Positions 1,291 to 15,001 are shown, counted from the stretch's first letter. The stretch is DNA of 15,965 bases from Octopus sinensis (GCF_006345805.1 NW_021825301.1:1-15965); one strand, 5' to 3'. Notes: a model not told the origin generated them from the sequence alone. A program made the numbers and translations.

Positions 1291-1926
1291 CACATATACA
1301 TAAACGTATGCAAAAGTACATACAAAAACATACGTGTGCGTGTGTGACTGACTACAAATACGTGGAGCTGAACACGGCGCGCAAGAAATAAATTGATAAA
1401 TAAATTGTTACGGAAATTGACGAAGTGTGCAGATTTAAGCGACAGAATGCCCATATCTTTTTGGACGCCCCATGTTGAATTGCAAAATTTTAATGTGATA
1501 TTTGTGTAATAACAAAAATCAAACCTGGAGTGTTTGTGTTTATATTACAGAGACAGTGTGTGTGTAAGTGTGAGAGAGAAAGAGAGATTGGCGGGAGAGA
1601 ACATTGCAAACAATGAATGAAATAAACATGAAATGAAAATTTCATATATAAGCAAAAATTCGTTAAAAACTATCTTGTACCGAATATTTATATTTGTGAA
1701 CTTGAAATATTCAATAATAAAAGTAAGTTCAGAAAGTAAATTTTCTTGAAAACTTCAATTTATAAAAAATTTCACTTGCTTAGAAAATATTTCTTTCAGC
1801 AATTTATCTTAGTTCTTTGCAAATAGCAAATGAAGATCTGAAATGAAAACATTAAAATAAAGAGCGAGCGACTTAGCAAATGGAAACGGAAAATTTCGCC
1901 TGCAACGAATTAATATAGTTTAAATA

Positions 1927-1955
1927 GTTGCTATGTCAATACCGGAAGTTGACAT
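1927..1955. promoter_or_regulatory. Candidate RFX X-box-like site abutting an ETS site
   Basis: GTTGCTATGTCAAT (1927-1940) matches GTTGCCATGGCAAC at 11 of 14 positions. ACCGGAAGT follows at 1941-1949 and is flanked by ATGTCAA/TTGACAT inverted arms. Confidence 0.3.
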
Positions 1956-2120
1956 TGAAAAACCTTTTTAAAGATGTTAATCATATATATATATATAAAT
2001 CAATAACATTTATTTAAAAAAAAATAAAGTGAAGGCCCTATTATGTATCCGAGGTCAAATTATTCATGCATCCCAAGTATGGAACCGATTCACGCAGTCA
2101 TTTTCGTGTGAAAAGCTAAT

Positions 2121-2124
2121 ACAC

Positions 2125-2193
<69 letters not shown>

Positions 2194-2316
2194 GCACAAA
2201 TCTATTTTATATAATGTGTGTATATATATATGTGTGTGTGTGTGTGTGAGTAAATATGTATGTATATATAGATATATGTGCATGAATGTATACATACATA
2301 CATACATACATACATA
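2121..2316. repeat. (CA)n, (TG)n and (TACA)n microsatellites
   Basis: Direct reading. Confidence 0.9.
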
Positions 2317-2399
2317 CAAATGGATCAGCAAAAATATGCAAGATTTTCTTAAATTTAGAATGTGCCTTTCGAGGAAGATTTTAAATAGATAAAAACAGA

Positions 2400-3155
2400 A
2401 AGCTTGCTGGTACAGATTGGTAAAGTATGATTGGTAGAATGTTAGCTTCTTGTACCAACATCCAACAATCATGTCTTTTCCAGATGCTTTTCCATCCTGG
2501 AGTTTCTGGATCACAGTTGCAAGAGTTTTACCATCAATGTTGTATGTCTTGGATGTAACACAGGAGCAATAACTTTTTCGGATTTCTTCCAGCCACAGAG
2601 CATCTTGGTTAAATTCCTTCTCTTCACTCCAGATTTTCCTCCAGAAGGAGTCTATGCCTTCGCGTGAAGGAGGTTCCGTGTTATTTATTGCTCCTCCTCT
2701 CATGTATCTGTATACTGCTGCCTGGTCGCTGGTAAATTTTTTGTTTATTGTTCTTCTCTCGGTTATTCTCTTCTGATGGAATTTTTCACTGAAAGCTTTT
2801 AGCTCCTGTTTTTGGGTAATCAGTTTGCAAGTGAGTGTCCACTTTTTGCTGTCTCCAAACATAATTTCGATCTCATTTTTTACTTCCTGTTGATGGGACG
2901 TATAGTGATTTGCTTGTTTGCATGCAATAAGCATCATTACATGACTGACGGTCTTCCGTAAACCAGTTATCTTTTTTTTCTGTCTTCAAAACCTATGATG
3001 ATACTTTCTTTGTTATTTCGGTTTTGTTCACTTTTTGAGTATCATTCATTTACTGTTTTACAGTTGCAGCCAGTATGTGGGTTCATCACACTGTTGTAAA
3101 TACTCATCACCAATTTCGTTAACAGCTTTTAATACTGTATCTGGTGTTTTTTTTT
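2400..3155 (-). mobile_element. Decayed R4/Dong-clade LINE ORF fragment, region just upstream of the RT domain
   Basis: ORF 2116..2937(-) contains INKKFTSDQAAVYRYM..PPSREGIDSFWRKIWSEEKEFNQDALWL..KASGKDMIVGCWYKKL. These correspond to the FW..IW...HN..A.W and KAPG.D.I..FW.K motifs of RLE-type LINEs. Frameshifted sequence continues upstream (KTPDTVLKAVNEIGDEYLQQCDEPTYW). Homology stops near 2400. Confidence 0.8.
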
Positions 3156-3264
3156 AATATTTACTTTGGTAGAGAATTTTCTCTCCTCGAGAGAGTACCT
3201 CAAAGCCAGTTATTTTTTCTCGGAAAATTTCACTAAGAGCACATTTCACCGGCATATAATCCTG

Positions 3265-3293
3265 ACTACTACTACTACTACTACTACTACTAC
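3265..3293. repeat. (CTA)n microsatellite
   Basis: Direct reading. Confidence 0.95.
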
Positions 3294-3732
3294 AATAATC
3301 GTTGCGGTTGTGTCTGCAATTTACCATAGTCGTAGTAGGGGGACCGTGGTCAGTTATGTATGTATGCATGTATGTCTAAGTGTGTGTGTGTTTGTGCGCG
3401 CCTGCGTGTGTGTACATAAATACATGCATAAAATATATATATATATAGGTAACAACTATGAGATCGCTTCCGTGAGCTCCTTCCAGTAGTCTTCTACTCA
3501 CTCAGGCTTACCTATTTCATCACACCTGATGAATCGATTAATCACCTCTCTGTGTTCAACGATTCTGACCACCAAGTGATATCACTTACCAGAAAACACC
3601 CAAAAACAATGCACGGGAGATTTTCTCTTTTGCACCTTAATGAACGTTTCCCCCTCGTCGTCATCGTTTTTGCCTCTTAATATTATCAAGTTCACCCACC
3701 CACTTATTGTTTTGTGTGGACGTTATCCAGTA

Positions 3733-4301
3733 CGAGGGTGTGCTAAAAATTTCCTGGTTTTGGGTTTAAAAAAATACAGGAGGATCAGTTACTTATGATT
3801 TTATTCAACATATTTGAAGCACTCCGTCGGTTATGACGACGAGGGTTCCGGTTGATCCGAATCAACGGAACAGCCTACTCGTGAAATTAACGTGTAAGTG
3901 GCTGAGCACTCCACAGACACGTGTATCCTTAAAGTAGTTCTCGGGGATATTCAACGTGACACAAAGAGTGACAAGGCCGGCCATTTGAAATACAGGTACA
4001 GCAGAAACAGGAAGTAAGAGTGAGAGAAAGTTGGGGTGAAAGAGTACAGCAGGGATCACCACCATCCCCTGCCGGAGCCTCGTGGAGCTTTAGGTGTTTT
4101 CGCTCAATAAACACTCACAACGCCCGGTCTGGGAATCGAAACCGCGATCTTATGACTGCGAGTCCGCTGCCCTATCAGTTTCACACACTTATTGCAGCGG
4201 TCCTTTAGTTTTTCTAAACTCTGTAAAAGAATTCGAGGTTGGGAACTCCAACTAATCCTTTCGTGATGCCCTTAAAAGCAAGAACTTTCAGCACCTCCTC
4301 G
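3733..4301 (-). mobile_element. Mariner-derived MITE (about 215 bp) interrupted by a SINE
   Basis: Imperfect TIRs: cgagggtgtgctaaaaatttcctggtttt (3733-) versus the reverse complement of aaaagcaagaactttcagcacctcctcg (-4301). TA lies on the left and TG on the right. The minus strand encodes a mariner transposase C-terminus, LEKLKDRCNKCVKLIG/[SINE]/YVE*. Confidence 0.8.
3815..4169 (-). mobile_element. tRNA-derived SINE family C, 5'-truncated
   Basis: Minus strand starts gcagcggactcgcagtcataagatcgcGGTTTCGATTCCCagaccggg (B-box / T-arm-like). It sits exactly between the two MITE halves. Confidence 0.75.
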
Positions 4302-4501
4302 TGTGCTTCTAGCAGAATACAAAACAAAAAAAGAAATAGTTATTCGCACTGTGTACAGCAAGATCTGAAACGATGGTTTTGTATATTTCTTCTTAATATG
4401 GTACGGCAGATTCGAACACAAAATATGAGAGTGGTTGTTGTGCTTGTTACAGGAGCCTAGCATATTTTGTTTTTGACTTTGCCTGAACGTATTAATAACC
4501 A

Positions 4502-4657
4502 GGTAGGAGAGTCCAGTTTGCTGGACATTGTTGTAGAGCTGAAAAAGAGGTAATTTCTACTCTCCTCCTCTGGAAGCCATCTACTCGCAATACCAGAGGG
4601 CGCACACTCTCCTACCCTGATGTAATCTCCAGGGATACAGGCATCCAGCAACAGGAT
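4502..4657 (+). mobile_element. RTE-like LINE C-terminal ORF fragment
   Basis: Translates to GRRVQFAGHCCRAEKEVISTLLLWKPSTRNTRGRTLSYPDVISRDTGIQQQD. This matches the post-RT R....GH..R.....L.W.P...R..GR.....D...D motif of RTE-group elements. Confidence 0.75.
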
Positions 4658-4742
4658 ATAAGCACTAATCAGAAAACATTTTGCTCACAGAAACTATGAG
4701 CGAAACCAGTGGCTTGTTTAAGTTCAAAAGATCCCAGTTACG

Positions 4743-4783
4743 TCCGGCTGACGAGACACATGACGAAACACCGATGTTCCAGA
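4743..4783 (+). ncRNA. Degenerate minimal type I hammerhead-like motif
   Basis: TCCGG-CTGACGA-G(ACACATGA)C-GAA-ACA(CCGA)TGT-T-CCAGA. Stem I has 4/5 pairs, stem II 2/3 and stem III 3/3; the triplet is GUU. Confidence 0.35.
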
Positions 4784-5470
4784 GTCCCTTCTGCCACTGA
4801 GTCGAGCGTCTTACGAACACAAAGTCGCCGTAAAACGAAGTTGTTTTCTTCTGACATTCACAACAGCGCCTAGCATCTTTTGCATTCGAATTTGCCGGAA
4901 TGTATTAAGAATAGATATGCAAACCACAGTTTATGGCAGAATTTTCTCCATTGTTTGCGAGCGCATATTAGCGTTAACCTGATAGCCGCAAGCATAACTC
5001 GAACAATCTGTGTGAATTTATTACCTCACATCTGTATGTGTTTAATCGTACATCTACTATAAATCTGTGCGTGTATGTTTGTATCCTTGTCTAAACTTTG
5101 TTTGCCCAACATCCTGACTTCGACTTTCTCTATGCATGTGAACTGAAGCATCTTTAAGTAACACTGTTAATAAGCGTCTCGTCTTGATCGCTGACCTCGC
5201 CAATAAATGAATCACACTTCTTGCCTGTTACTGAACATATCTTCCTACTTTCCTCTCCTGTCCCTTTATTGCTCTAGTTCTCTCTCTCTATCTCCCTCTT
5301 CCTCTCCCTCTTGCTACTGTTGGCGGGATGGTTGATTACGAAGGTAATGATCAGCATAGAAAGGAAAGTTATAGTAGCAGAGATGATTATCGCATTGCTG
5401 GTCAGTTCTTATTCAATTTCGATCATTCCATTGTAAAACACATGAAATATTAAAAATGAATTTGTATCCT

Positions 5471-5523
5471 TCAAGGCGGTGACCCAGCATGGCCACAGTC
5501 CAAAGCCTGAAACAATTAAAAGA
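5471..5523 (+). mobile_element. SINE family B 3' tail fragment
   Basis: aaggcggtgacccagcatggccacagtccaaagcctgaaacaattaaaaga is homologous to 7681-7735. Confidence 0.65.
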
Positions 5524-5916
5524 CACTCACACACGAAATAATATGTATATCTACACACCTTTATGCACAGTATGCAGGAGAATGCCAAACAAGCGCAACA
5601 ACACAGCAGTGTTCAGATGAATGAGAATTTAAACTCCAGCCTTTTCAACCAGGGGCTAGCGCCTTGATATTGAAAGTTAGCTATAAGAACGATCTTTGTC
5701 GAGCTGTTATAGAGGTAGAAAGGCAGCTAAACGCAAGAATGCTTAAAGCGTGTGTTTACATGGAATATAAAATACACATTATAGATTAAAAAACAAAAGG
5801 AATTATGTAATTTACTTACACACACAAACACATACGCACACACCATTCTCTCTCTCTCCCTTTATTTCATATTTAAATTCTCTTCCGTTCTCTCTCCTTT
5901 CGACTGGCCATTTTTT

Positions 5917-5988
5917 CATCGACCCCAGTGCGTAACTGGTACTTAATTTATCGACCCCGAAAGGATGAAAGGTAAAGTCAACCTCGGC
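5917..5988 (-). mobile_element. Inverted SINE family A fragment (left arm of foldback)
   Basis: Its reverse complement matches 6003-6074 at 68 of 72 positions. Confidence 0.85.
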
Positions 5989-6148
5989 TGAGTTCAAATT
6001 CCGCCGAGGTCGACTTTGCCTTTCATCCTTTCAGGGTCGATAAATTAAGTACCAGTTACTCACTGGGGTCGATGGAATCGACTTAATCCCTTTGTCTGTC
6101 CTTGTTTGTCCCCTCTGTGTTTAGCCCCTTGTGGGTAGTAAAGAAATA
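5989..6148 (+). mobile_element. 5'-truncated SINE family A, tail type 2
   Basis: Runs from tgagttcaaattccgccgaggtcgactttgcc to gtgggtagtaaagaaata. Confidence 0.9.
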
Positions 6149-6299
6149 TATATTCACATTCATCTTAACTGCTCTTTCTCTACTTTTATCCTCTTTGTTC
6201 AACTTCTTATCACAATCCGATCATTACCAATTCCCACAGATGTACAAAAATGTCAATACCTACACAACTTCCTCTCCTCTCATTCAGTAAGGATGCACC

Positions 6300-6424
6300 T
6301 AAAATTTCTCTCTCTTTTCTTTCTCTCTCTACCCCACCCTTCTGTCTGTCTGCTTCTCTGTCTCTCTCTCTCTTTCTCTGTCTCTCTCTCTCCCCCCTCT
6401 CTCTCTCTGTCTCTCTCTCTCTCT
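6300..6424. repeat. CT-rich microsatellite
   Basis: Direct reading. Confidence 0.9.
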
Positions 6425-6554
6425 GCCTTGTCGAGAACTTCCCTACATAACGAACGGCCTGAATGATTTGGATTTTATACCAATAATTAAAATAAATTTT
6501 TTTGCTGGCGCAGACTGCAAGCATTCAATTTGGTTTCTATGTTTCTACATTATA

Positions 6555-6597
6555 GCATGGCTGTCTAGTGACTGAAACAAGTAAAAGATAAAAAAGA
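6555..6597 (+). mobile_element. SINE family B extreme 3' tail
   Basis: gcatggctgtctagtgactgaaacaagtaaaagataaaa; followed by (TACA)n(CA)n to 6673. Confidence 0.65.
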
Positions 6598-6628
6598 TAT
6601 ACATACGTACATACATACATACATACAT

Positions 6629-6677
<49 letters not shown>

Positions 6678-6846
6678 TATAATATTTTTTAATATATTTT
6701 TAATGTGTATTTTTTAATGTGCATTATTTAGTACAGAGATTTTTAGTACAATATTAATAATAATATATTTAAATTTATATTTCATTATAGATAATATCTT
6801 TCCTTATTAATTGAATTACTTTATTGAGGTTCTGTCTCTTAATTTT

Positions 6847-6850
<4 letters not shown>

Positions 6851-6883
<33 letters not shown>

Positions 6884-6902
6884 CTCTCTCTCTCTCTCTC
6901 AG

Positions 6903-6942
<40 letters not shown>
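6851..6942. repeat. (CT)n/(TA)n microsatellite
   Basis: Direct reading. Confidence 0.95.
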
Positions 6943-7077
6943 AAGAAAGAAGAAGATACGGAGATTGTGAAGTTAATAATAGTTTATCCACAACAAATCG
7001 AACATTATCCCTTGCACCTGTTTCAATTATACTGAGTGAATTAATTAAATATTAATTTCATATTGCTGAGCATGAGG

Positions 7078-7213
7078 TTAGGTTCAGTCCCACTGAGTGG
7101 CACCTTGGAAAAGTGTCTTTTACAATAGCCTGGGGCCGACCAAAGCCTTGTGAGTGGATTTGGTAAACTGAAACTGAAAGAAGCCCGCCACCCGTCCTAT
7201 TATATTTTAGGTG

Positions 7214-7273
<60 letters not shown>

Positions 7274-7432
7274 ATTATATATATCTTGATAAAACACCAA
7301 GGTTCAGATGTCGGGGTGGAGTTTTGTCATGGCTACCGAAATAATTGTCACATATTACATTTACCGATAAATTCCTCTATTTATATAATATCGAGGTATC
7401 TTTCATTCTTGTTGTTTCTTACCATTTCTATC

Positions 7433-7490
<58 letters not shown>

Positions 7491-7740
7491 CCATATGCGC
7501 GCGTGTGTGTGGTGTGTGTGTGTGTGTGTGTGTGTGTTTGTTCCCCCAACATCGCTTGACAACCAATGTTGGTGTGTTTACATGTTTACATCTCCTTAAC
7601 CTAACGGTTCGGCAAAATACACCGAAAGAATAAGTACTAGGCTTACAAAGAATAAGTCCTGAGCTCGATTTGTTCGACTAAAGGTGGTGCTCTAACATGG
7701 CCGCAATCAAATGACTGAAACAAGTAAAAGAGTAAAAAAA
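7078..7740 (+). mobile_element. SINE family B with expanded internal microsatellite and nested insert
   Basis: The 5' half runs from ggttcagtcccactgagtggcacc to gaaactgaaagaagcccg (7081-7187). The 3' half runs from gtttgttcccccaacatcgcttgacaacc to tgactgaaacaagtaaaagag (about 7536-7735). Both match the minus copy at 14401-14752. Confidence 0.85.
7285..7435. mobile_element. Unclassified ~150-bp insert between two (TA)n tracts inside the SINE
   Basis: Non-microsatellite sequence bounded by (TA)n at about 7216-7268 and 7436-7488. It is absent from the 14401-14752 SINE copy. Confidence 0.45.

Positions 7741-10103: not shown

Positions 10104-10146
<43 letters not shown>
10104..10146. repeat. (ATT)n tail / microsatellite
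   Basis: Direct reading. Confidence 0.97.
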
Positions 10147-10147
<1 letters not shown>

Positions 10148-10361
10148 GGCGGCGAGCTGACAAAATCGTTTGCGCGCCGGACAAAATGCTTAGCGGTTCG
10201 TCCATCTCTACGTTCTGAGTTCAAATGCCGCCGAGGTCGACTTCGCCATTCATCCGTTTGGGGAACAATAAAATAAGTACCAGTTGAGCACTGGAGCAGA
10301 TGTAATCGACTCGTCACCCCATACCAAAATTTCAAACCTTACGCCTATAATAAAAAGGATT
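10147..10361 (+). mobile_element. Full-length diverged SINE family A, tail type 1
   Basis: Starts aggcggcgagctgacaaaatcg, contains gagttcaaatgcc and ends ccaaaatttcaaaccttacgcctataataaaaaggatt. Confidence 0.85.
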
Positions 10362-10623
10362 AGTATTGTTGTTGTTGTTTGTGTTGCTGTTTTCTAACTT
10401 TTGCTTTCTCATGAAGCTGGAACTAGTTATAATTCTTTCTTGCTATCTCCTCAATAAACCATTTGTGGCGCATTAATTACACCATAATTCCAACAACAAC
10501 AACAACAACAGCAAAAAGATAAAAAAACAAAAGCAGACGATAGGAATAAAATATTACAAACATTGTACTCTTTAAAATACAATTTGGTAATACCTTTTCT
10601 CACTCTCAAAATTCACTCTCAAA

Positions 10624-12183: not shown

Positions 12184-12450
<267 letters not shown>

Positions 12451-12899: not shown

Positions 12900-13365
12900 C
12901 TTATATACATACATACACACTTGCTTTCCCCACACACCACTACACCATACACCACCATAACACACACCACATCACACCACACCACACCACCACGCACACA
13001 CTAGCACTGACCACTTCCCAGCCCCACATACATACACGCATACATCAAGGTCACCAACCCTCTTCCACACGCACATACATATACTCTTATACACACGCAC
13101 GCGCACCTTCGTTTTGGGATCACCACTACTTTATTATCTCCCCTTCTTCCTAGCACTCCTGCGTGACCCCTCTGTCTGGCATTCGCCATGATAGATCGCT
13201 AGCCACGACACATTCTTTATTTTCTCTCCTTGTTTCTTTCAGTGTTCCTTTCTGTGGAAGAGCGTAGGCTCGAAACGTTAAAGACTTTTTCATTTCCCGA
13301 GTGTTAAACTAATACACCTGTTTGTTGTCTACACCACCTGTCTTCATCTTTTGATTTTTTGTGAA
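12900..13365 (+). mobile_element. Putative Penelope-like terminal-repeat remnant
   Basis: CA/pyrimidine-rich tract followed by about 250 bp (13108-13362) homologous to the minus copy at 14780-15001. It contains the minimal hammerhead at 13248-13283. Confidence 0.5.
13248..13283 (+). ncRNA. Minimal type I hammerhead-like motif (A6U variant)
   Basis: CTTT-CTGTGGA-A-GAGC(GTAG)GCTC-GAA-ACGT-T-AAAG. Stem I has 4/4 pairs, stem II 4/4, and the minimal stem III is the palindrome ACGT. Confidence 0.55.
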
Positions 13366-13415
13366 TTCCCCCCCCCCCACCTATATATATATATATATAT
13401 ATATATTTATACATA

Positions 13416-13676
13416 CAACAACAATTGAGGAACGGCTACAATAGGCCGTTCGACCCACTAGAAATAGCAGCCAGGGCTCCAACCGCAAATAGTAGTAATT
13501 CCGAAATCTAAGGAAAAATTAAAAAACATTTACCCTGTTCTTCTTTAGACAATGCATTGTTTCGGCGTTTTTTTAATGGTAAACCAGCCTGATTAAATTA
13601 AATTAAACTTAATCAAGTCAATCTTCCAAAAGGCCAACGCGCTCATCAGTAAAGAGCCGTTCCTCAATTGTTGTTG
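13416..13676. mobile_element. 261-bp element with perfect 22-bp terminal inverted repeats, containing a hammerhead ribozyme
   Basis: caacaacaattgaggaacggct (13416-13437) is the exact reverse complement of agccgttcctcaattgttgttg (13655-13676). No clear target-site duplication. Confidence 0.8.
13542..13655 (-). ncRNA. Type I hammerhead ribozyme with intact core
   Basis: Minus strand reads UCUUUA-CUGAUGA-G[C]GCGUU..(66 nt)..AACGCC-GAA-ACAA(UGCA)UUGU-C^UAAAGA. All conserved core bases are present, stem I is 6 bp, and the triplet is GUC. Predicted cut is between 13548 and 13547. Confidence 0.8.
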
Positions 13677-13875
13677 AATTTATTCATAGTCTCTGACTAT
13701 TTCCTCTTTCTCACTAGACCGCTGGTGTCAAATAATTTCTATTGAATTTTTTGCTAATATATTTATGCATATAAAATTTTATCTACATATACTTTTTCTG
13801 TGAGGATTTTCTGTCCCTCAAACTCCTGGTGTCATTTCCTACATATGTTTAAGGATCTTTTCGATGGTAATACTT

Positions 13876-14400: not shown

Positions 14401-14752
14401 CTTTTACTCTTTTACTTGTTTCAGTCATTTGAATGCGGCCATGCTGGAGCACCGCCTTTAATCGAGCAACTCGACCCCGGGACTTATTCTTTGTAAGCCC
14501 AGTACTTATTCTATCGGTCTCTTTTGCCGAACCGCTAAGTGACGGGGACGTAAACACACCAGCATCGGTTGTCAGGCAATGCTAGGGGGACAAACAACAC
14601 AAGACACCACACACACCACATCATATACATATATATATATAACGACAGGATTCTTTCAGTTTCCGTCTTCTTTCGGTTTCCGTAGTGGGACTGAACCCGG
14701 AACCATGTGGTTGGTAAACAAGCTACTTATCACACAGTCACTCCTGCGCCTA
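14401..14752 (-). mobile_element. SINE family B, full length with internal deletion
   Basis: Minus strand head taggcgcaggagtgactgtgtgataag..ccgggttcagtcccact and tail tgactgaaacaagtaaaagagtaaaag. It lacks about 70 bp present at 7098-7165. Confidence 0.85.
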
Positions 14753-14779
14753 TATATATATATTTCAAATTTACAGAAA

Positions 14780-15001
14780 ACAAAAAATGAAGACAAGTGA
14801 AAGAAGAAGCAGGTGTATTAGTTTAACACACTCGGGAAGAATGGAAAAGTCTTTTACGGTTCCACCCCACACTCTTCGACAGAAAGGATTAGGAGGAAAA
14901 AAGAAACCGTTAGAGAAAAAAATGTGTAGGGCGTAACGGTTGACATGATGAGATAGCCGGAAGAAAGAAGCTGAATGAAAGGGAGATAATAACGGTGACC
15001 C
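14780..15001 (-). mobile_element. Second, more decayed copy of the 13108-13362 repeat
   Basis: Shares gggtcacc..ttattatctccc, ctttctgtNgaagag..cgtaaaagactttt and ttcccgagtg..ttaaactaatacacctg. The hammerhead remnant is at 14851-14886. Confidence 0.6.

What the first reader, a model, noticed from the sequence alone, without database searches (positions are those of the whole stretch)
13416..13676. Intact hammerhead ribozyme packaged between perfect 22-bp terminal inverted repeats
Seen: on the minus strand the ribozyme starts at the inner edge of the TIR. It has a 6-bp stem I (UCUUUA/UAAAGA), CUGAUGA, stem II (G-C, bulged C, GCGUU/AACGC), GAAA, a fully palindromic stem III (ACAAUGCAUUGU) and a GUC site. 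Known: metazoan type I hammerheads occur mainly in PLE terminal repeats and tandem non-LTR retrozymes, whereas TIR-bounded short elements are normally DNA MITEs without ribozymes. Inference: this non-coding element combines both features and may be an undescribed ribozyme-bearing mobile or regulatory RNA. The TIR duplex would hold the two cleavage products together. Perfect TIRs and an intact core suggest it is young or constrained. With only one ribozyme, circle formation would need tandem copies or dimer cleavage. I cannot confirm novelty without a search.
Basis: partly seen in the sequence, partly recalled or inferred. Interest (0 to 1): 0.88.

Follow-up and report, generated by a model that had tools for sequence, protein, structure and literature searches.

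The report
Truncated Penelope-type retroelement carrying a hammerhead
The hammerhead ribozyme motif and the perfect 22-bp inverted ends are real, but together they look like the usual footprint of a truncated Penelope-like retrotransposon insertion in an animal (probably octopod) genome, not a new kind of ribozyme-bearing element.

Summary
A perfect 22-bp inverted repeat (13416-13437 / 13655-13676) encloses a complete type I hammerhead on the minus strand, with cleavage predicted at 13548|13547. A descriptor search finds this hammerhead once in the window and never at the observed stem lengths in 300 shuffles.

The interpretation as an undescribed MITE-ribozyme hybrid is not supported. [quoted passage not shown]

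The insert is 262 bp. It is flanked by an 11-bp target duplication (10/11 match) and sits at a (TA)n tract. Its 3' end lies 132 nt after the cut site.

PLE insertions are known to carry a head-to-head inverted, 5'-truncated partner copy, so their 3' ends form terminal inverted repeats. I reproduced this in a weevil PLE locus fetched here. A second, PLE-style minimal hammerhead relic lies about 130 bp away on the other strand, across the same (TA)n tract.

No RT/endonuclease ORF and no other copy of the element was found. The source genome could not be searched.

Verdict: a new member of a known kind, of low to moderate interest.

The parts
13416..13677 (-). Whole inserted element B (262 bp), read 5'->3' on the minus strand: 22-nt inverted copy, hammerhead, 3' region, 3' terminus at 13416
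   Evidence: Bounded by the TIRs and by an 11-bp direct repeat. No other copy in the window.
13655..13676 (-). Right TIR arm. Interpreted as a 22-nt, 5'-truncated, head-to-head inverted copy of the element's 3' terminus.
   Evidence: Perfect reverse complement of 13416-13437. The interpretation rests on analogy with the PLE architecture (PMC8557442; control locus L013).
13541..13655 (-). Type I hammerhead ribozyme motif. Stem I 13655-13650/13547-13542; CUGAUGA 13649-13643; helix II 13642-13564 with bulged C 13641 and 66-nt hairpin insert 13635-13570; GAAA 13563-13560; helix III 13560-13549; C17 13548; cleavage 13548|13547.
   Evidence: Sequence reading, constrained fold, descriptor search against shuffles, dimer cofold. 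Not detected by Rfam.
13438..13540 (-). Non-coding region between the ribozyme and the 3' terminal repeat. Its 3' part includes the 5' arm and loop of a terminal hairpin (the arm at 13445-13451 pairs with 13430-13436, which lies inside the left TIR arm).
   Evidence: No ORF of 30 aa or more lies wholly inside the element. Without the TIRs the interior is not unusually structured (z = -1.1). Hairpin seen.
13416..13437 (-). Left TIR arm, which is the 3' terminal 22 nt of the hammerhead-strand copy (...AGCCGUUCCUCAAUUGUUGUUG-3')
   Evidence: It lies 132 nt downstream of the cut site. By comparison, the distance is 92 nt in Anolis PAc (PMC11167929).
13405..13415 (.). Left copy of the putative target-site duplication, ATTTATACATA
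   Evidence: Matches 13678-13688 at 10/11. An equal or better repeat occurred in 20 of 20000 flank shuffles and at 9 of 2227 control positions in the window.
13678..13688 (.). Right copy of the putative target-site duplication, ATTTATTCATA. One extra A (13677) lies between it and the TIR.
13368..13405 (.). C11 run (13368-13378) followed by a (TA)12 microsatellite (13382-13405). This AT-rich tract is shared by the two hammerhead-bearing fragments.
   Evidence: (TA)n and AT-rich targets are reported for PLEs (PMC8557442, PMC11167929).
13200..13367 (+). Element A, a fragment of a dispersed repeat. It carries a PLE-style minimal hammerhead relic at 13248-13283 (CUUU|CUGUGGA|A|GAGC-GUAG-GCUC|GAAA|CGU|U|AAAG; A6 is U). 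Its 3' end lies 88 nt after the would-be cut site and abuts the C-run/(TA)n.
   Evidence: It is the only hit of a min-HHR descriptor allowing one core mismatch, with 0 hits in 200 shuffles. Repeat family shown. The layout matches the Sitophilus and Anolis PLE hammerheads.
14768..14888 (-). Second, more decayed copy of element A. It also ends at a (TA)n run.
   Evidence: 80% identity over 126 nt; alignment.

Best explanation
The 262-bp element (13416-13677) is a dead-on-arrival product of Penelope-like-element (PLE) retrotransposition in an animal genome, probably that of an octopod. It is either a severely 5'-truncated PLE/pseudo-LTR copy or a PLE-mobilised, non-coding, retrozyme-like derivative. 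The PLE enzyme nicks AT-rich DNA, here at the edge of a (TA)n tract. It starts reverse transcription at a defined site a short way downstream of the hammerhead. Because both target strands can be nicked and extended, two cDNAs are made head-to-head. One ran about 240 nt, through the 3' region and the whole hammerhead. The other ran only 22 nt. Joining them left the element's 3' terminus at both outer ends, which produces the 'TIR', and an 11-bp target duplication. On this reading the hammerhead is cargo inherited from the parent element. Its weak 4-bp helix III is a 12-nt palindrome, so if it cleaves at all it does so as a double hammerhead between two copies of the RNA, as proposed for PLE, newt and viroid hammerheads. 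Shown here: the motifs, the TIR, the TSD statistics, the neighbouring second hammerhead relic, and the same architecture in a real PLE locus. Inferred: the double-priming origin of the 22-bp arm, PLE parentage, and any catalytic activity.
For: (1) The hammerhead has the published PLE marks (PMC4209133). These are an unpaired base at the 5' end of a long helix II, G10.1-C11.1, a palindromic helix III, no recognisable loop-loop contacts, and occurrence as a single dispersed motif. (2) An 11-bp direct repeat (10/11) flanks the element; an equal or better repeat appeared in 20 of 20000 flank shuffles and at 9 of 2227 control positions. PLE TSDs of 8, 9 and 10 bp are reported (PMC3846280), and I found an 8-bp TSD in control locus L013. 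(3) The insertion is at (TA)12/AT-rich DNA, which is a preferred PLE target (PMC8557442, PMC11167929). (4) The distance from cut site to 3' end is 132 nt, against 92 nt in PAc and about 50 to 86 nt in L013 (counted from the coordinates). (5) Control locus L013 (Sitophilus oryzae) shows a PLE unit at 1432-7432. It has a head-to-head inverted copy, hammerheads about 87 nt inside each outer end, terminal inverted repeats formed by the 3' ends, an 8-bp TSD and a 36-bp tail at one end. (6) Purified PAc protein cleaves and extends both target strands from the same RT start sites (PMC11167929). (7) A second, PLE-type minimal hammerhead relic lies on the opposite strand about 130 bp away, ending at the same (TA)n. 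It belongs to a repeat family with two copies in the window. Close pairs of minimal hammerheads on opposite strands were noted for PLEs (PMC4209133). (8) The best named homologues of a LINE ORF in the window are from the octopod Argonauta hians. Octopus vulgaris has recently active Penelope families (PMC13282606).
Against: No RT or GIY-YIG coding sequence is in the window. No other copy of element B was found in the window or in any collection searched. Homology of the TIR/3' end to a real PLE is therefore untested. Helix II carries a 66-nt insert and helix III is longer than in typical PLE minimal hammerheads. The usual 30-40-bp PLE tail is absent, with only one extra A. The TSD is imperfect and offset by 1 nt, in low-complexity DNA. 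Elements A and B share no sequence outside the ribozyme core. The octopod assignment rests on 37% protein identity.
Confidence: 0.65

Rival explanations
1. It is a true MITE: a non-autonomous cut-and-paste DNA transposon whose 22-bp TIRs are transposase binding sites and which happens to have captured a hammerhead-bearing fragment.
For: Perfect 22-bp TIRs, small size (262 bp), non-coding and AT-rich. An 11-bp flanking repeat would fit the 9-11-bp TSDs I recall for Mutator-like elements. DNA transposons, including Mutator and MITEs, are annotated in Octopus vulgaris (PMC13282606).
Against: The TSD does not abut both TIRs (an extra A at 13677) and is imperfect, although the TIRs are perfect. No second copy or TIR match exists in the window. 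Every other feature matches PLE insertions, for which TIR-like ends are already explained: the hammerhead type, the distance from ribozyme to end, the (TA)n target and the neighbouring hammerhead relic.
Confidence: 0.12
2. It is a solo monomer of a tandem non-LTR retrozyme (a satellite-like hammerhead repeat). The 22-bp inverted arm is a later local rearrangement or an assembly artefact.
For: The unit size of about 240 nt lies within the 150-450-bp range of metazoan retrozymes (PMC7229834). Solo monomers are common in some families (bioRxiv 10.64898/2026.07.22.740005). PLE-type inverted structures are said to disturb assemblies (PMC8557442).
Against: No tandem copy is in the window. The interior is not highly self-paired (z = -1.1), unlike retrozyme circRNAs. 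The ribozyme lacks the canonical loop 1/loop 2 layout. Because retrozymes are now argued to be PLE derivatives, this rival differs from the best explanation mainly in how the TIR arose.
Confidence: 0.12
3. It is a host-domesticated ribozyme or regulatory RNA, for example an intronic or UTR hammerhead, whose panhandle formed by the TIR is functional.
For: The catalytic core is intact, the TIR is perfect, and the whole-element fold is strongly stabilised (z = -6.3).
Against: The stability comes only from the TIR. No gene context was found in the window. The surroundings are microsatellites and decayed repeats. No conservation data are available.
Confidence: 0.05
4. The hammerhead resemblance is a chance match.
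For: Rfam reports nothing, and the hammerhead fold is not the MFE.
Against: There were 0 matches at the observed stem lengths in 300 shuffles. Rfam also misses validated PLE hammerheads. A second hammerhead relic lies next door.
Confidence: 0.02

Closest known systems
Hammerheads in the pseudo-LTRs and 3' ends of Penelope-like elements (Cervera & de la Pena 2014, PMC4209133; Craig et al. 2021, PMC8557442; Arkhipova et al. 2013, PMC3846280; PMC11167929)
   Same: Type I topology. [quoted passage not shown] Mostly found as single dispersed motifs from truncated copies. The ribozyme sits a short distance upstream of the element's 3' end. AT-rich/(TA)n targets, TSDs of about 8-11 bp, and a head-to-head inverted partner copy that makes inverted terminal repeats.
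   Different: No RT/GIY-YIG ORF nearby. The inverted partner is only 22 bp, so there is one ribozyme, not two. There is a 66-nt hairpin insert in helix II, a 4-bp stem plus tetraloop helix III instead of 0-2 bp, and no 30-40-bp tail. Homology to a specific PLE was not shown.
Metazoan non-LTR retrozymes (Cervera & de la Pena 2020, PMC7229834; Li et al. 2026 preprint, 10.64898/2026.07.22.740005)
   Same: Short, non-coding, low-GC unit of about 240 nt with a type I hammerhead. Solo monomers exist, and the family is thought to be PLE-derived and PLE-mobilised.
   Different: Not tandem here. The interior is not highly self-paired. The ribozyme lacks the canonical 6-bp/4-bp helices with interacting loops. 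No inverted termini are described for retrozymes.
MITEs (miniature inverted-repeat transposable elements)
   Same: Size, non-coding nature, perfect short TIRs and a flanking direct repeat.
   Different: The TSD does not abut both TIRs and is imperfect. The element contains a ribozyme of the retroelement type. No family of copies was shown. The TIRs are better explained as duplicated 3' ends.
Schistosoma Sm-alpha SINE-like hammerhead elements and newt satellite 2 hammerheads
   Same: Short non-autonomous repeats carrying type I hammerheads with a weak, palindromic helix III. At least the newt and other amphibian hammerheads were found to cleave efficiently as dimers (PMC7229834).
   Different: Those have canonical loop-loop contacts and short helix II loops. 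No pol III boxes or tRNA-like part were found here.

Membership tests
Hammerhead ribozyme, type I | Conserved core C3-U4-G5-A6-N7-G8-A9 ... G12-A13-A14, an A15.1-U16.1 pair and an N-U-H cleavage triplet | tested here: met
   CUGAUGA at 13649-13643, GAAA at 13563-13560, GUC ending at 13548.
Hammerhead ribozyme, type I | Three helices around the core, with helix I open and helices II and III closed | tested here: met
   6-bp helix I, 1+5-bp helix II with a hairpin extension, 4-bp helix III with a UGCA loop. 0 of 300 shuffles reach these stem lengths.
Hammerhead ribozyme, type I | Match to the Rfam covariance model (Hammerhead_1) at gathering score | tested here: not met
   No hammerhead hit at gathering score or at E<=10. 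Control: the validated PAc hammerheads in L007 are also missed at E<=1.
Hammerhead ribozyme, type I | Loop 1/loop 2 tertiary contacts of fast natural hammerheads | tested here: inconclusive
   Helix I has no internal loop, and helix II opens into a large internal loop and hairpin. Contacts cannot be predicted with these tools.
Hammerhead ribozyme, type I | Self-cleavage at the predicted site | not testable with these tools
   Needs in vitro transcription of a monomer and a dimer, with core mutants.
Penelope-like element insertion (PLE / pseudo-LTR fragment) | ORF with RT and GIY-YIG endonuclease | tested here: not met
   No RVT or GIY-YIG hit in 60 six-frame pieces of the window. This is expected for a 5'-truncated or non-autonomous copy, but it leaves parentage unproven.
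Penelope-like element insertion (PLE / pseudo-LTR fragment) | PLE-style hammerhead: unpaired base at the 5' end of a long helix II, G10.1-C11.1, palindromic helix III | tested here: met
   compared with PMC4209133 and with the PAc and Sitophilus motifs seen.
Penelope-like element insertion (PLE / pseudo-LTR fragment) | Hammerhead in sense orientation a short distance upstream of the insertion's 3' end | tested here: met
   132 nt from cut site to 3' end, against 92 nt in PAc and about 50-86 nt in L013 (counted).
Penelope-like element insertion (PLE / pseudo-LTR fragment) | Head-to-head inverted 5'-truncated partner, so that 3' ends form inverted terminal repeats | tested here: met
   The 22-bp arm at 13655-13676 is the reverse complement of the 3' terminus. 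The same topology occurs in L013. That the arm arose this way is inferred.
Penelope-like element insertion (PLE / pseudo-LTR fragment) | Short variable TSD and an AT-rich/(TA)n target | tested here: met
   11-bp repeat matching 10/11 (equal or better in 20/20000 flank shuffles and 9/2227 control positions), adjacent to (TA)12.
Penelope-like element insertion (PLE / pseudo-LTR fragment) | Optional 30-40-bp tail at one end | tested here: not met
   Only one extra base (A 13677). The tail is optional in the literature (PMC8557442).
Penelope-like element insertion (PLE / pseudo-LTR fragment) | Sequence homology to the pseudo-LTR/3' end of a full-length PLE of the same genome | not testable with these tools
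   The source genome is not in the searchable collections. No cephalopod PLE appeared among the 120 listed PLE proteins.
Non-LTR retrozyme | Tandem head-to-tail repeats of a 150-450-bp unit, each with a hammerhead | tested here: not met
   Single copy in the window; no tandem array.
Non-LTR retrozyme | Expressed as a highly self-paired circular RNA | tested here: inconclusive
   The interior fold has z = -1.1. Expression and circularity cannot be tested here.
MITE | Terminal inverted repeats | tested here: met
   22 bp, perfect.
MITE | TSD of superfamily-specific length directly abutting both TIRs | tested here: not met
   Bases immediately outside the TIRs differ (..CATA| vs |AATT..). The 11-bp repeat is offset by 1 nt and has 1 mismatch.
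MITE | Many copies sharing the TIRs, and a related autonomous transposase element | not testable with these tools
   No further copy in the window or in the collections.

The most novel reading that the evidence does not exclude
The 22-bp TIRs may not be an insertion scar. They could be a conserved, functional part of a family of short hammerhead-bearing elements. In that case a panhandle RNA would hold the two cleavage products together or present the ends for ligation or priming. That would make it a distinct non-autonomous class between MITEs and retrozymes, with an unusually large helix II.
Probability: 0.07. Interest if true: 0.6.

Novelty: new member of a known kind. Interest (0 to 1): 0.25.

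Why it matters
If the reading is right, this is one more truncated PLE or retrozyme-type copy. Its main value is for annotation. Short TIR-bounded elements carrying hammerheads should not be called MITEs, and Rfam-based scans miss this class of ribozyme. Minor points of interest are the 66-nt hairpin inside helix II, the 12-nt palindromic helix III, and the pair of unrelated hammerhead fragments that share one (TA)n tract. The pair fits reuse of AT-rich microsatellites as PLE landing sites in a cephalopod-like genome.

Tried and rejected
- **Rfam.** The scan found no hammerhead at gathering score (whole window) or at E<=10 (region 13350-13750). A control on the Anolis PAc locus shows this is uninformative.
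- **Exact-pattern scans.** Viral contigs gave 0 hits for the TIR and for the hammerhead pattern.
- **Metagenome scan with a 19-mer of the TIR.** It gave 6 hits, all bacterial chance matches. Three related bacterial contigs (L002, L004, L006) carry the same 18-nt sequence as a tight intergenic hairpin. L002 encodes ordinary bacterial proteins, so I take this as coincidence.
- **Prokaryote genome scan with a 20-mer of the hammerhead 3' half.** It gave one chance hit with no CUGAUGA upstream.
- **Protein routes to more DNA of the source genome.** Eight window ORFs are not in the protein collection. The word-index search with the LINE ORF found nothing. The all-against-all search gave only weak taxon evidence, from Argonauta hians. 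The Anolis PLE protein, taken from the supplement of PMC11167929, retrieved 2531 PLE proteins, but none of the 120 listed was from a cephalopod. A search with P0001 returned only P0001 itself.
- **SRA run numbers of the closest Logan contigs.** They could not be tied to a species through the paper library.
- **tRNA-like or pol III SINE origin.** ARAGORN found nothing.
- **Homology between elements A and B.** None beyond the ribozyme core.
- **Bacterial promoter/terminator scan.** Not meaningful for a eukaryotic window.
- **Supplements of PMC4209133 and PMC8557442.** Not held.

Full report
**What is in the sequence**

The window is eukaryotic. It is full of microsatellites and decayed dispersed repeats, has about 37% GC, and yields no Rfam or tRNA hits.

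The 22-mer CAACAACAATTGAGGAACGGCT occurs once on each strand, at 13416-13437 and 13655-13676. There are no other matches at up to three mismatches, and none in 200 shuffles.

On the minus strand, starting at the last base of the right arm, lies a complete type I hammerhead:
- helix I: UCUUUA (13655-13650) pairs with UAAAGA (13547-13542)
- CUGAUGA: 13649-13643
- helix II: G10.1 (13642) pairs with C11.1 (13564), C 13641 is bulged, and GCGUU (13640-13636) pairs with AACGC (13569-13565)
- GAAA: 13563-13560
- helix III: ACAA[UGCA]UUGU, 13560-13549
- C17: 13548, so the predicted cleavage is 13548|13547

Helix II also encloses 66 nt (13635-13570) that fold into a long imperfect hairpin.

**Is it more than chance?**

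My type I descriptor finds only this site in the window. In 300 dinucleotide-preserving shuffles it gave nine relaxed hits in total and none with the observed stem lengths.

Rfam reports no hammerhead here, either at gathering score or at E<=10. To judge that negative result I fetched the Anolis carolinensis Poseidon (PAc) locus. Its hammerhead has been validated by C3G, G8C and rescue mutants (PMC11167929). Both genomic copies of that ribozyme in L007 are also invisible to Rfam at E<=1. Rfam silence is therefore not evidence against a hammerhead of this type.

**Folding**

The hammerhead conformation is 4 kcal/mol above the MFE of the 115-nt segment (-24.8 vs -28.9). Helix III alone has no predicted stability as a hairpin. 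Its 12-nt palindrome forms a -16.5 kcal/mol duplex between two copies.

The MFE of two copies is exactly a double hammerhead. It has an intermolecular 12-bp helix III and helices I formed in trans (-66.7 vs 2 x -28.9 kcal/mol). The whole 261-nt RNA is closed by the TIR duplex (z = -6.3). Without the TIRs the interior is ordinary (z = -1.1).

**Boundaries and target**

The element is flanked by ATTTATACATA (13405-13415) and ATTTATTCATA (13678-13688). These match at 10 of 11 positions, with one extra A (13677) on the right. A repeat this good next to the boundaries arose in 20 of 20000 flank shuffles and at 9 of 2227 control positions in the window. The bases directly abutting the TIRs do not form a TSD. 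The left flank is C11 followed by (TA)12.

**Surroundings**

No RT or GIY-YIG domain is detectable in any of 60 six-frame pieces of the window. No second copy of the element exists in the window.

A second hammerhead-like motif lies 130 bp to the left, on the other strand, at 13248-13283: CUUU|CUGUGGA|A|GAGC-GUAG-GCUC|GAAA|CGU|U|AAAG. It has the minimal PLE layout: an extra base between positions 9 and 10.1, G10.1-C11.1, and a palindromic ACGU helix III. It has one core change (A6 to U). It is the only hit of a minimal-hammerhead descriptor that allows one core mismatch, and 200 shuffles gave none.

This motif sits in a dispersed repeat (element A, about 13200-13367). An inverted, more decayed copy lies at 14768-14888. 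Both copies end at a (TA)n run, and in element A the end is 88 nt after the would-be cut site. Two unrelated hammerhead-bearing fragments therefore lie tail-to-tail across one (TA)n tract. They share no similarity outside the ribozyme core.

**What the literature says about this pattern**

- Cervera and de la Pena (PMC4209133) found hammerheads in the flanking repeats of all the PLEs they examined.
  - The metazoan forms have a larger helix II, an unpaired base at its 5' end, G10.1-C11.1 and a palindromic helix III.
  - They are thought to act as dimers, and most occur as single dispersed motifs from truncated PLEs.
  - Some occur as pairs 100-700 bp apart on opposite strands.
- Craig et al. 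(PMC8557442) state three things. PLE insertions are heavily 5'-truncated. [quoted passage not shown] Microsatellites such as (TA)n are preferred targets.
- Arkhipova et al. (PMC3846280) report such inverted units with 8-, 9- and 10-bp TSDs, and head-to-head as the commonest arrangement.
- PMC11167929 shows that purified PAc protein cuts and extends both strands of AT-rich DNA. Reverse transcription starts at an internal stem-loop about 90 nt downstream of the hammerhead cut site.

**A control done here**

A Sitophilus oryzae PLE locus (L013) shows the whole pattern. The unit at 1432-7432 consists of an inverted copy head-to-head with a partial tandem. Hammerheads lie about 87 nt inside each outer end. 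The 3' ends form terminal inverted repeats. An 8-bp TSD (TTGTGATA) flanks the unit, and a 36-bp tail is present at one end only.

In the Anolis locus the insertion ends 92 nt after the cut site. The window element is a miniature of this design: a 240-nt forward copy with 132 nt from cut site to 3' end, a 22-nt inverted partner, an 11-bp TSD and a (TA)n target.

**Best explanation**

Element B is an insertion made by reverse transcription, from the PLE/retrozyme lineage. It is either a severely 5'-truncated PLE or a non-coding pseudo-LTR-derived element mobilised by a PLE. Its 'TIR' is the element's 3' terminus copied twice in opposite directions during head-to-head priming.

The ribozyme is inherited cargo with an intact core. 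Any activity is likely to need two RNA copies. The double-priming step, the PLE parentage and the activity are inferences. I put the overall reading at about 0.65.

**Rivals**

- A genuine MITE (0.12) would explain the perfect TIRs. It could fit an 11-bp TSD only for a Mutator-like family. It does not explain the offset, imperfect TSD or the PLE-type features.
- A solo retrozyme monomer with a secondary rearrangement or assembly artefact (0.12) overlaps strongly with the main reading.
- A domesticated functional RNA (0.05) and a chance match (0.02) have little support.

**Taxon**

The only named relatives of a LINE-like ORF (2119-2985, minus strand) are Argonauta hians proteins at 37% identity. 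Unnamed Logan contigs reach about 80% DNA identity. An octopod or other cephalopod source is therefore plausible but unproven. Penelope-like elements are an annotated and recently active order in Octopus vulgaris (PMC13282606). Rfam found 235 Hammerhead_1 matches in the giant squid genome (PMC6962438).

**Limits**

The source genome could not be searched. Pattern scans of the viral, metagenome and prokaryote collections gave nothing or chance hits. Copy number, TIR retention in other copies and homology to a full-length PLE, which are the decisive tests, remain open.

**Verdict**

The element is a new member of a known kind, of low to moderate interest.

Noticed in passing
window 13248-13283 (+), within repeat 13200-13367; second copy 14768-14888 (-): A PLE-style minimal hammerhead relic (CUGUGGA core, A6->U) lies in a dispersed repeat whose 3' end abuts (TA)n. 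It is tail-to-tail with the reported element. It is the only hit of the relaxed descriptor, with 0 hits in 200 shuffles.
   Followed up: yes
window 7508-7737 (+) and 14402-14620 (-); partial copies 6554-6625 and 5470-5523: A SINE-like dispersed repeat of about 170-230 bp (83-87% identity between copies). It ends in ...AAATGACTGAAACAAGTAAAAGAGTAAAAG and is often followed by a microsatellite. From memory it resembles abundant octopus SINEs; this was not verified.
   Followed up: partly
window 5914-6077; related copies 161-371, 675-807, 10136-10385: An almost perfect 164-bp palindrome (81-nt arms, 91% complementary, 2-nt spacer) is built from another dispersed repeat. It may be a head-to-head duplication or a foldback element.
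   Followed up: partly
window 2119-2985 (-): A 289-aa open frame resembling the N-terminal part of a LINE ORF2, with no Pfam hit. It is cut off by an (AC)n microsatellite. There are 581 homologues at E<=0.001, and the only named ones looked up are from Argonauta hians.
   Followed up: partly
whole window: Very high microsatellite density: (TA)n, (TC)n, (AC)n, (ATAC)n, (ATT)n, (ATG)n, and a 266-bp TA-rich microsatellite array at 12184-12449. Several dispersed repeats end at such tracts.
   Followed up: no
L002 1783-1830, and the related contigs L004 and L006 (metagenome contigs): Bacterial contigs carry ACAATTGAGGAACGGCTT/AAGCCGTTCCTCAATTGT as a tight intergenic hairpin, matching 19 nt of the window TIR exactly. 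I judge this a coincidence, because L002 encodes ordinary bacterial proteins and the contigs' flanks match one another but not the window.
   Followed up: yes
L007 5995 and 8633 (Anolis carolinensis PAc locus): Rfam release 15 at E<=1 does not detect the experimentally validated PAc hammerhead. PLE-type hammerheads are therefore systematically missed by covariance-model scans.
   Followed up: yes
L013 1432-7432 (Sitophilus oryzae): A textbook composite PLE insertion: an inverted copy plus a partial tandem, three identical minimal hammerheads, an 8-bp TSD TTGTGATA, and a 36-bp tail at one end only.
   Followed up: yes
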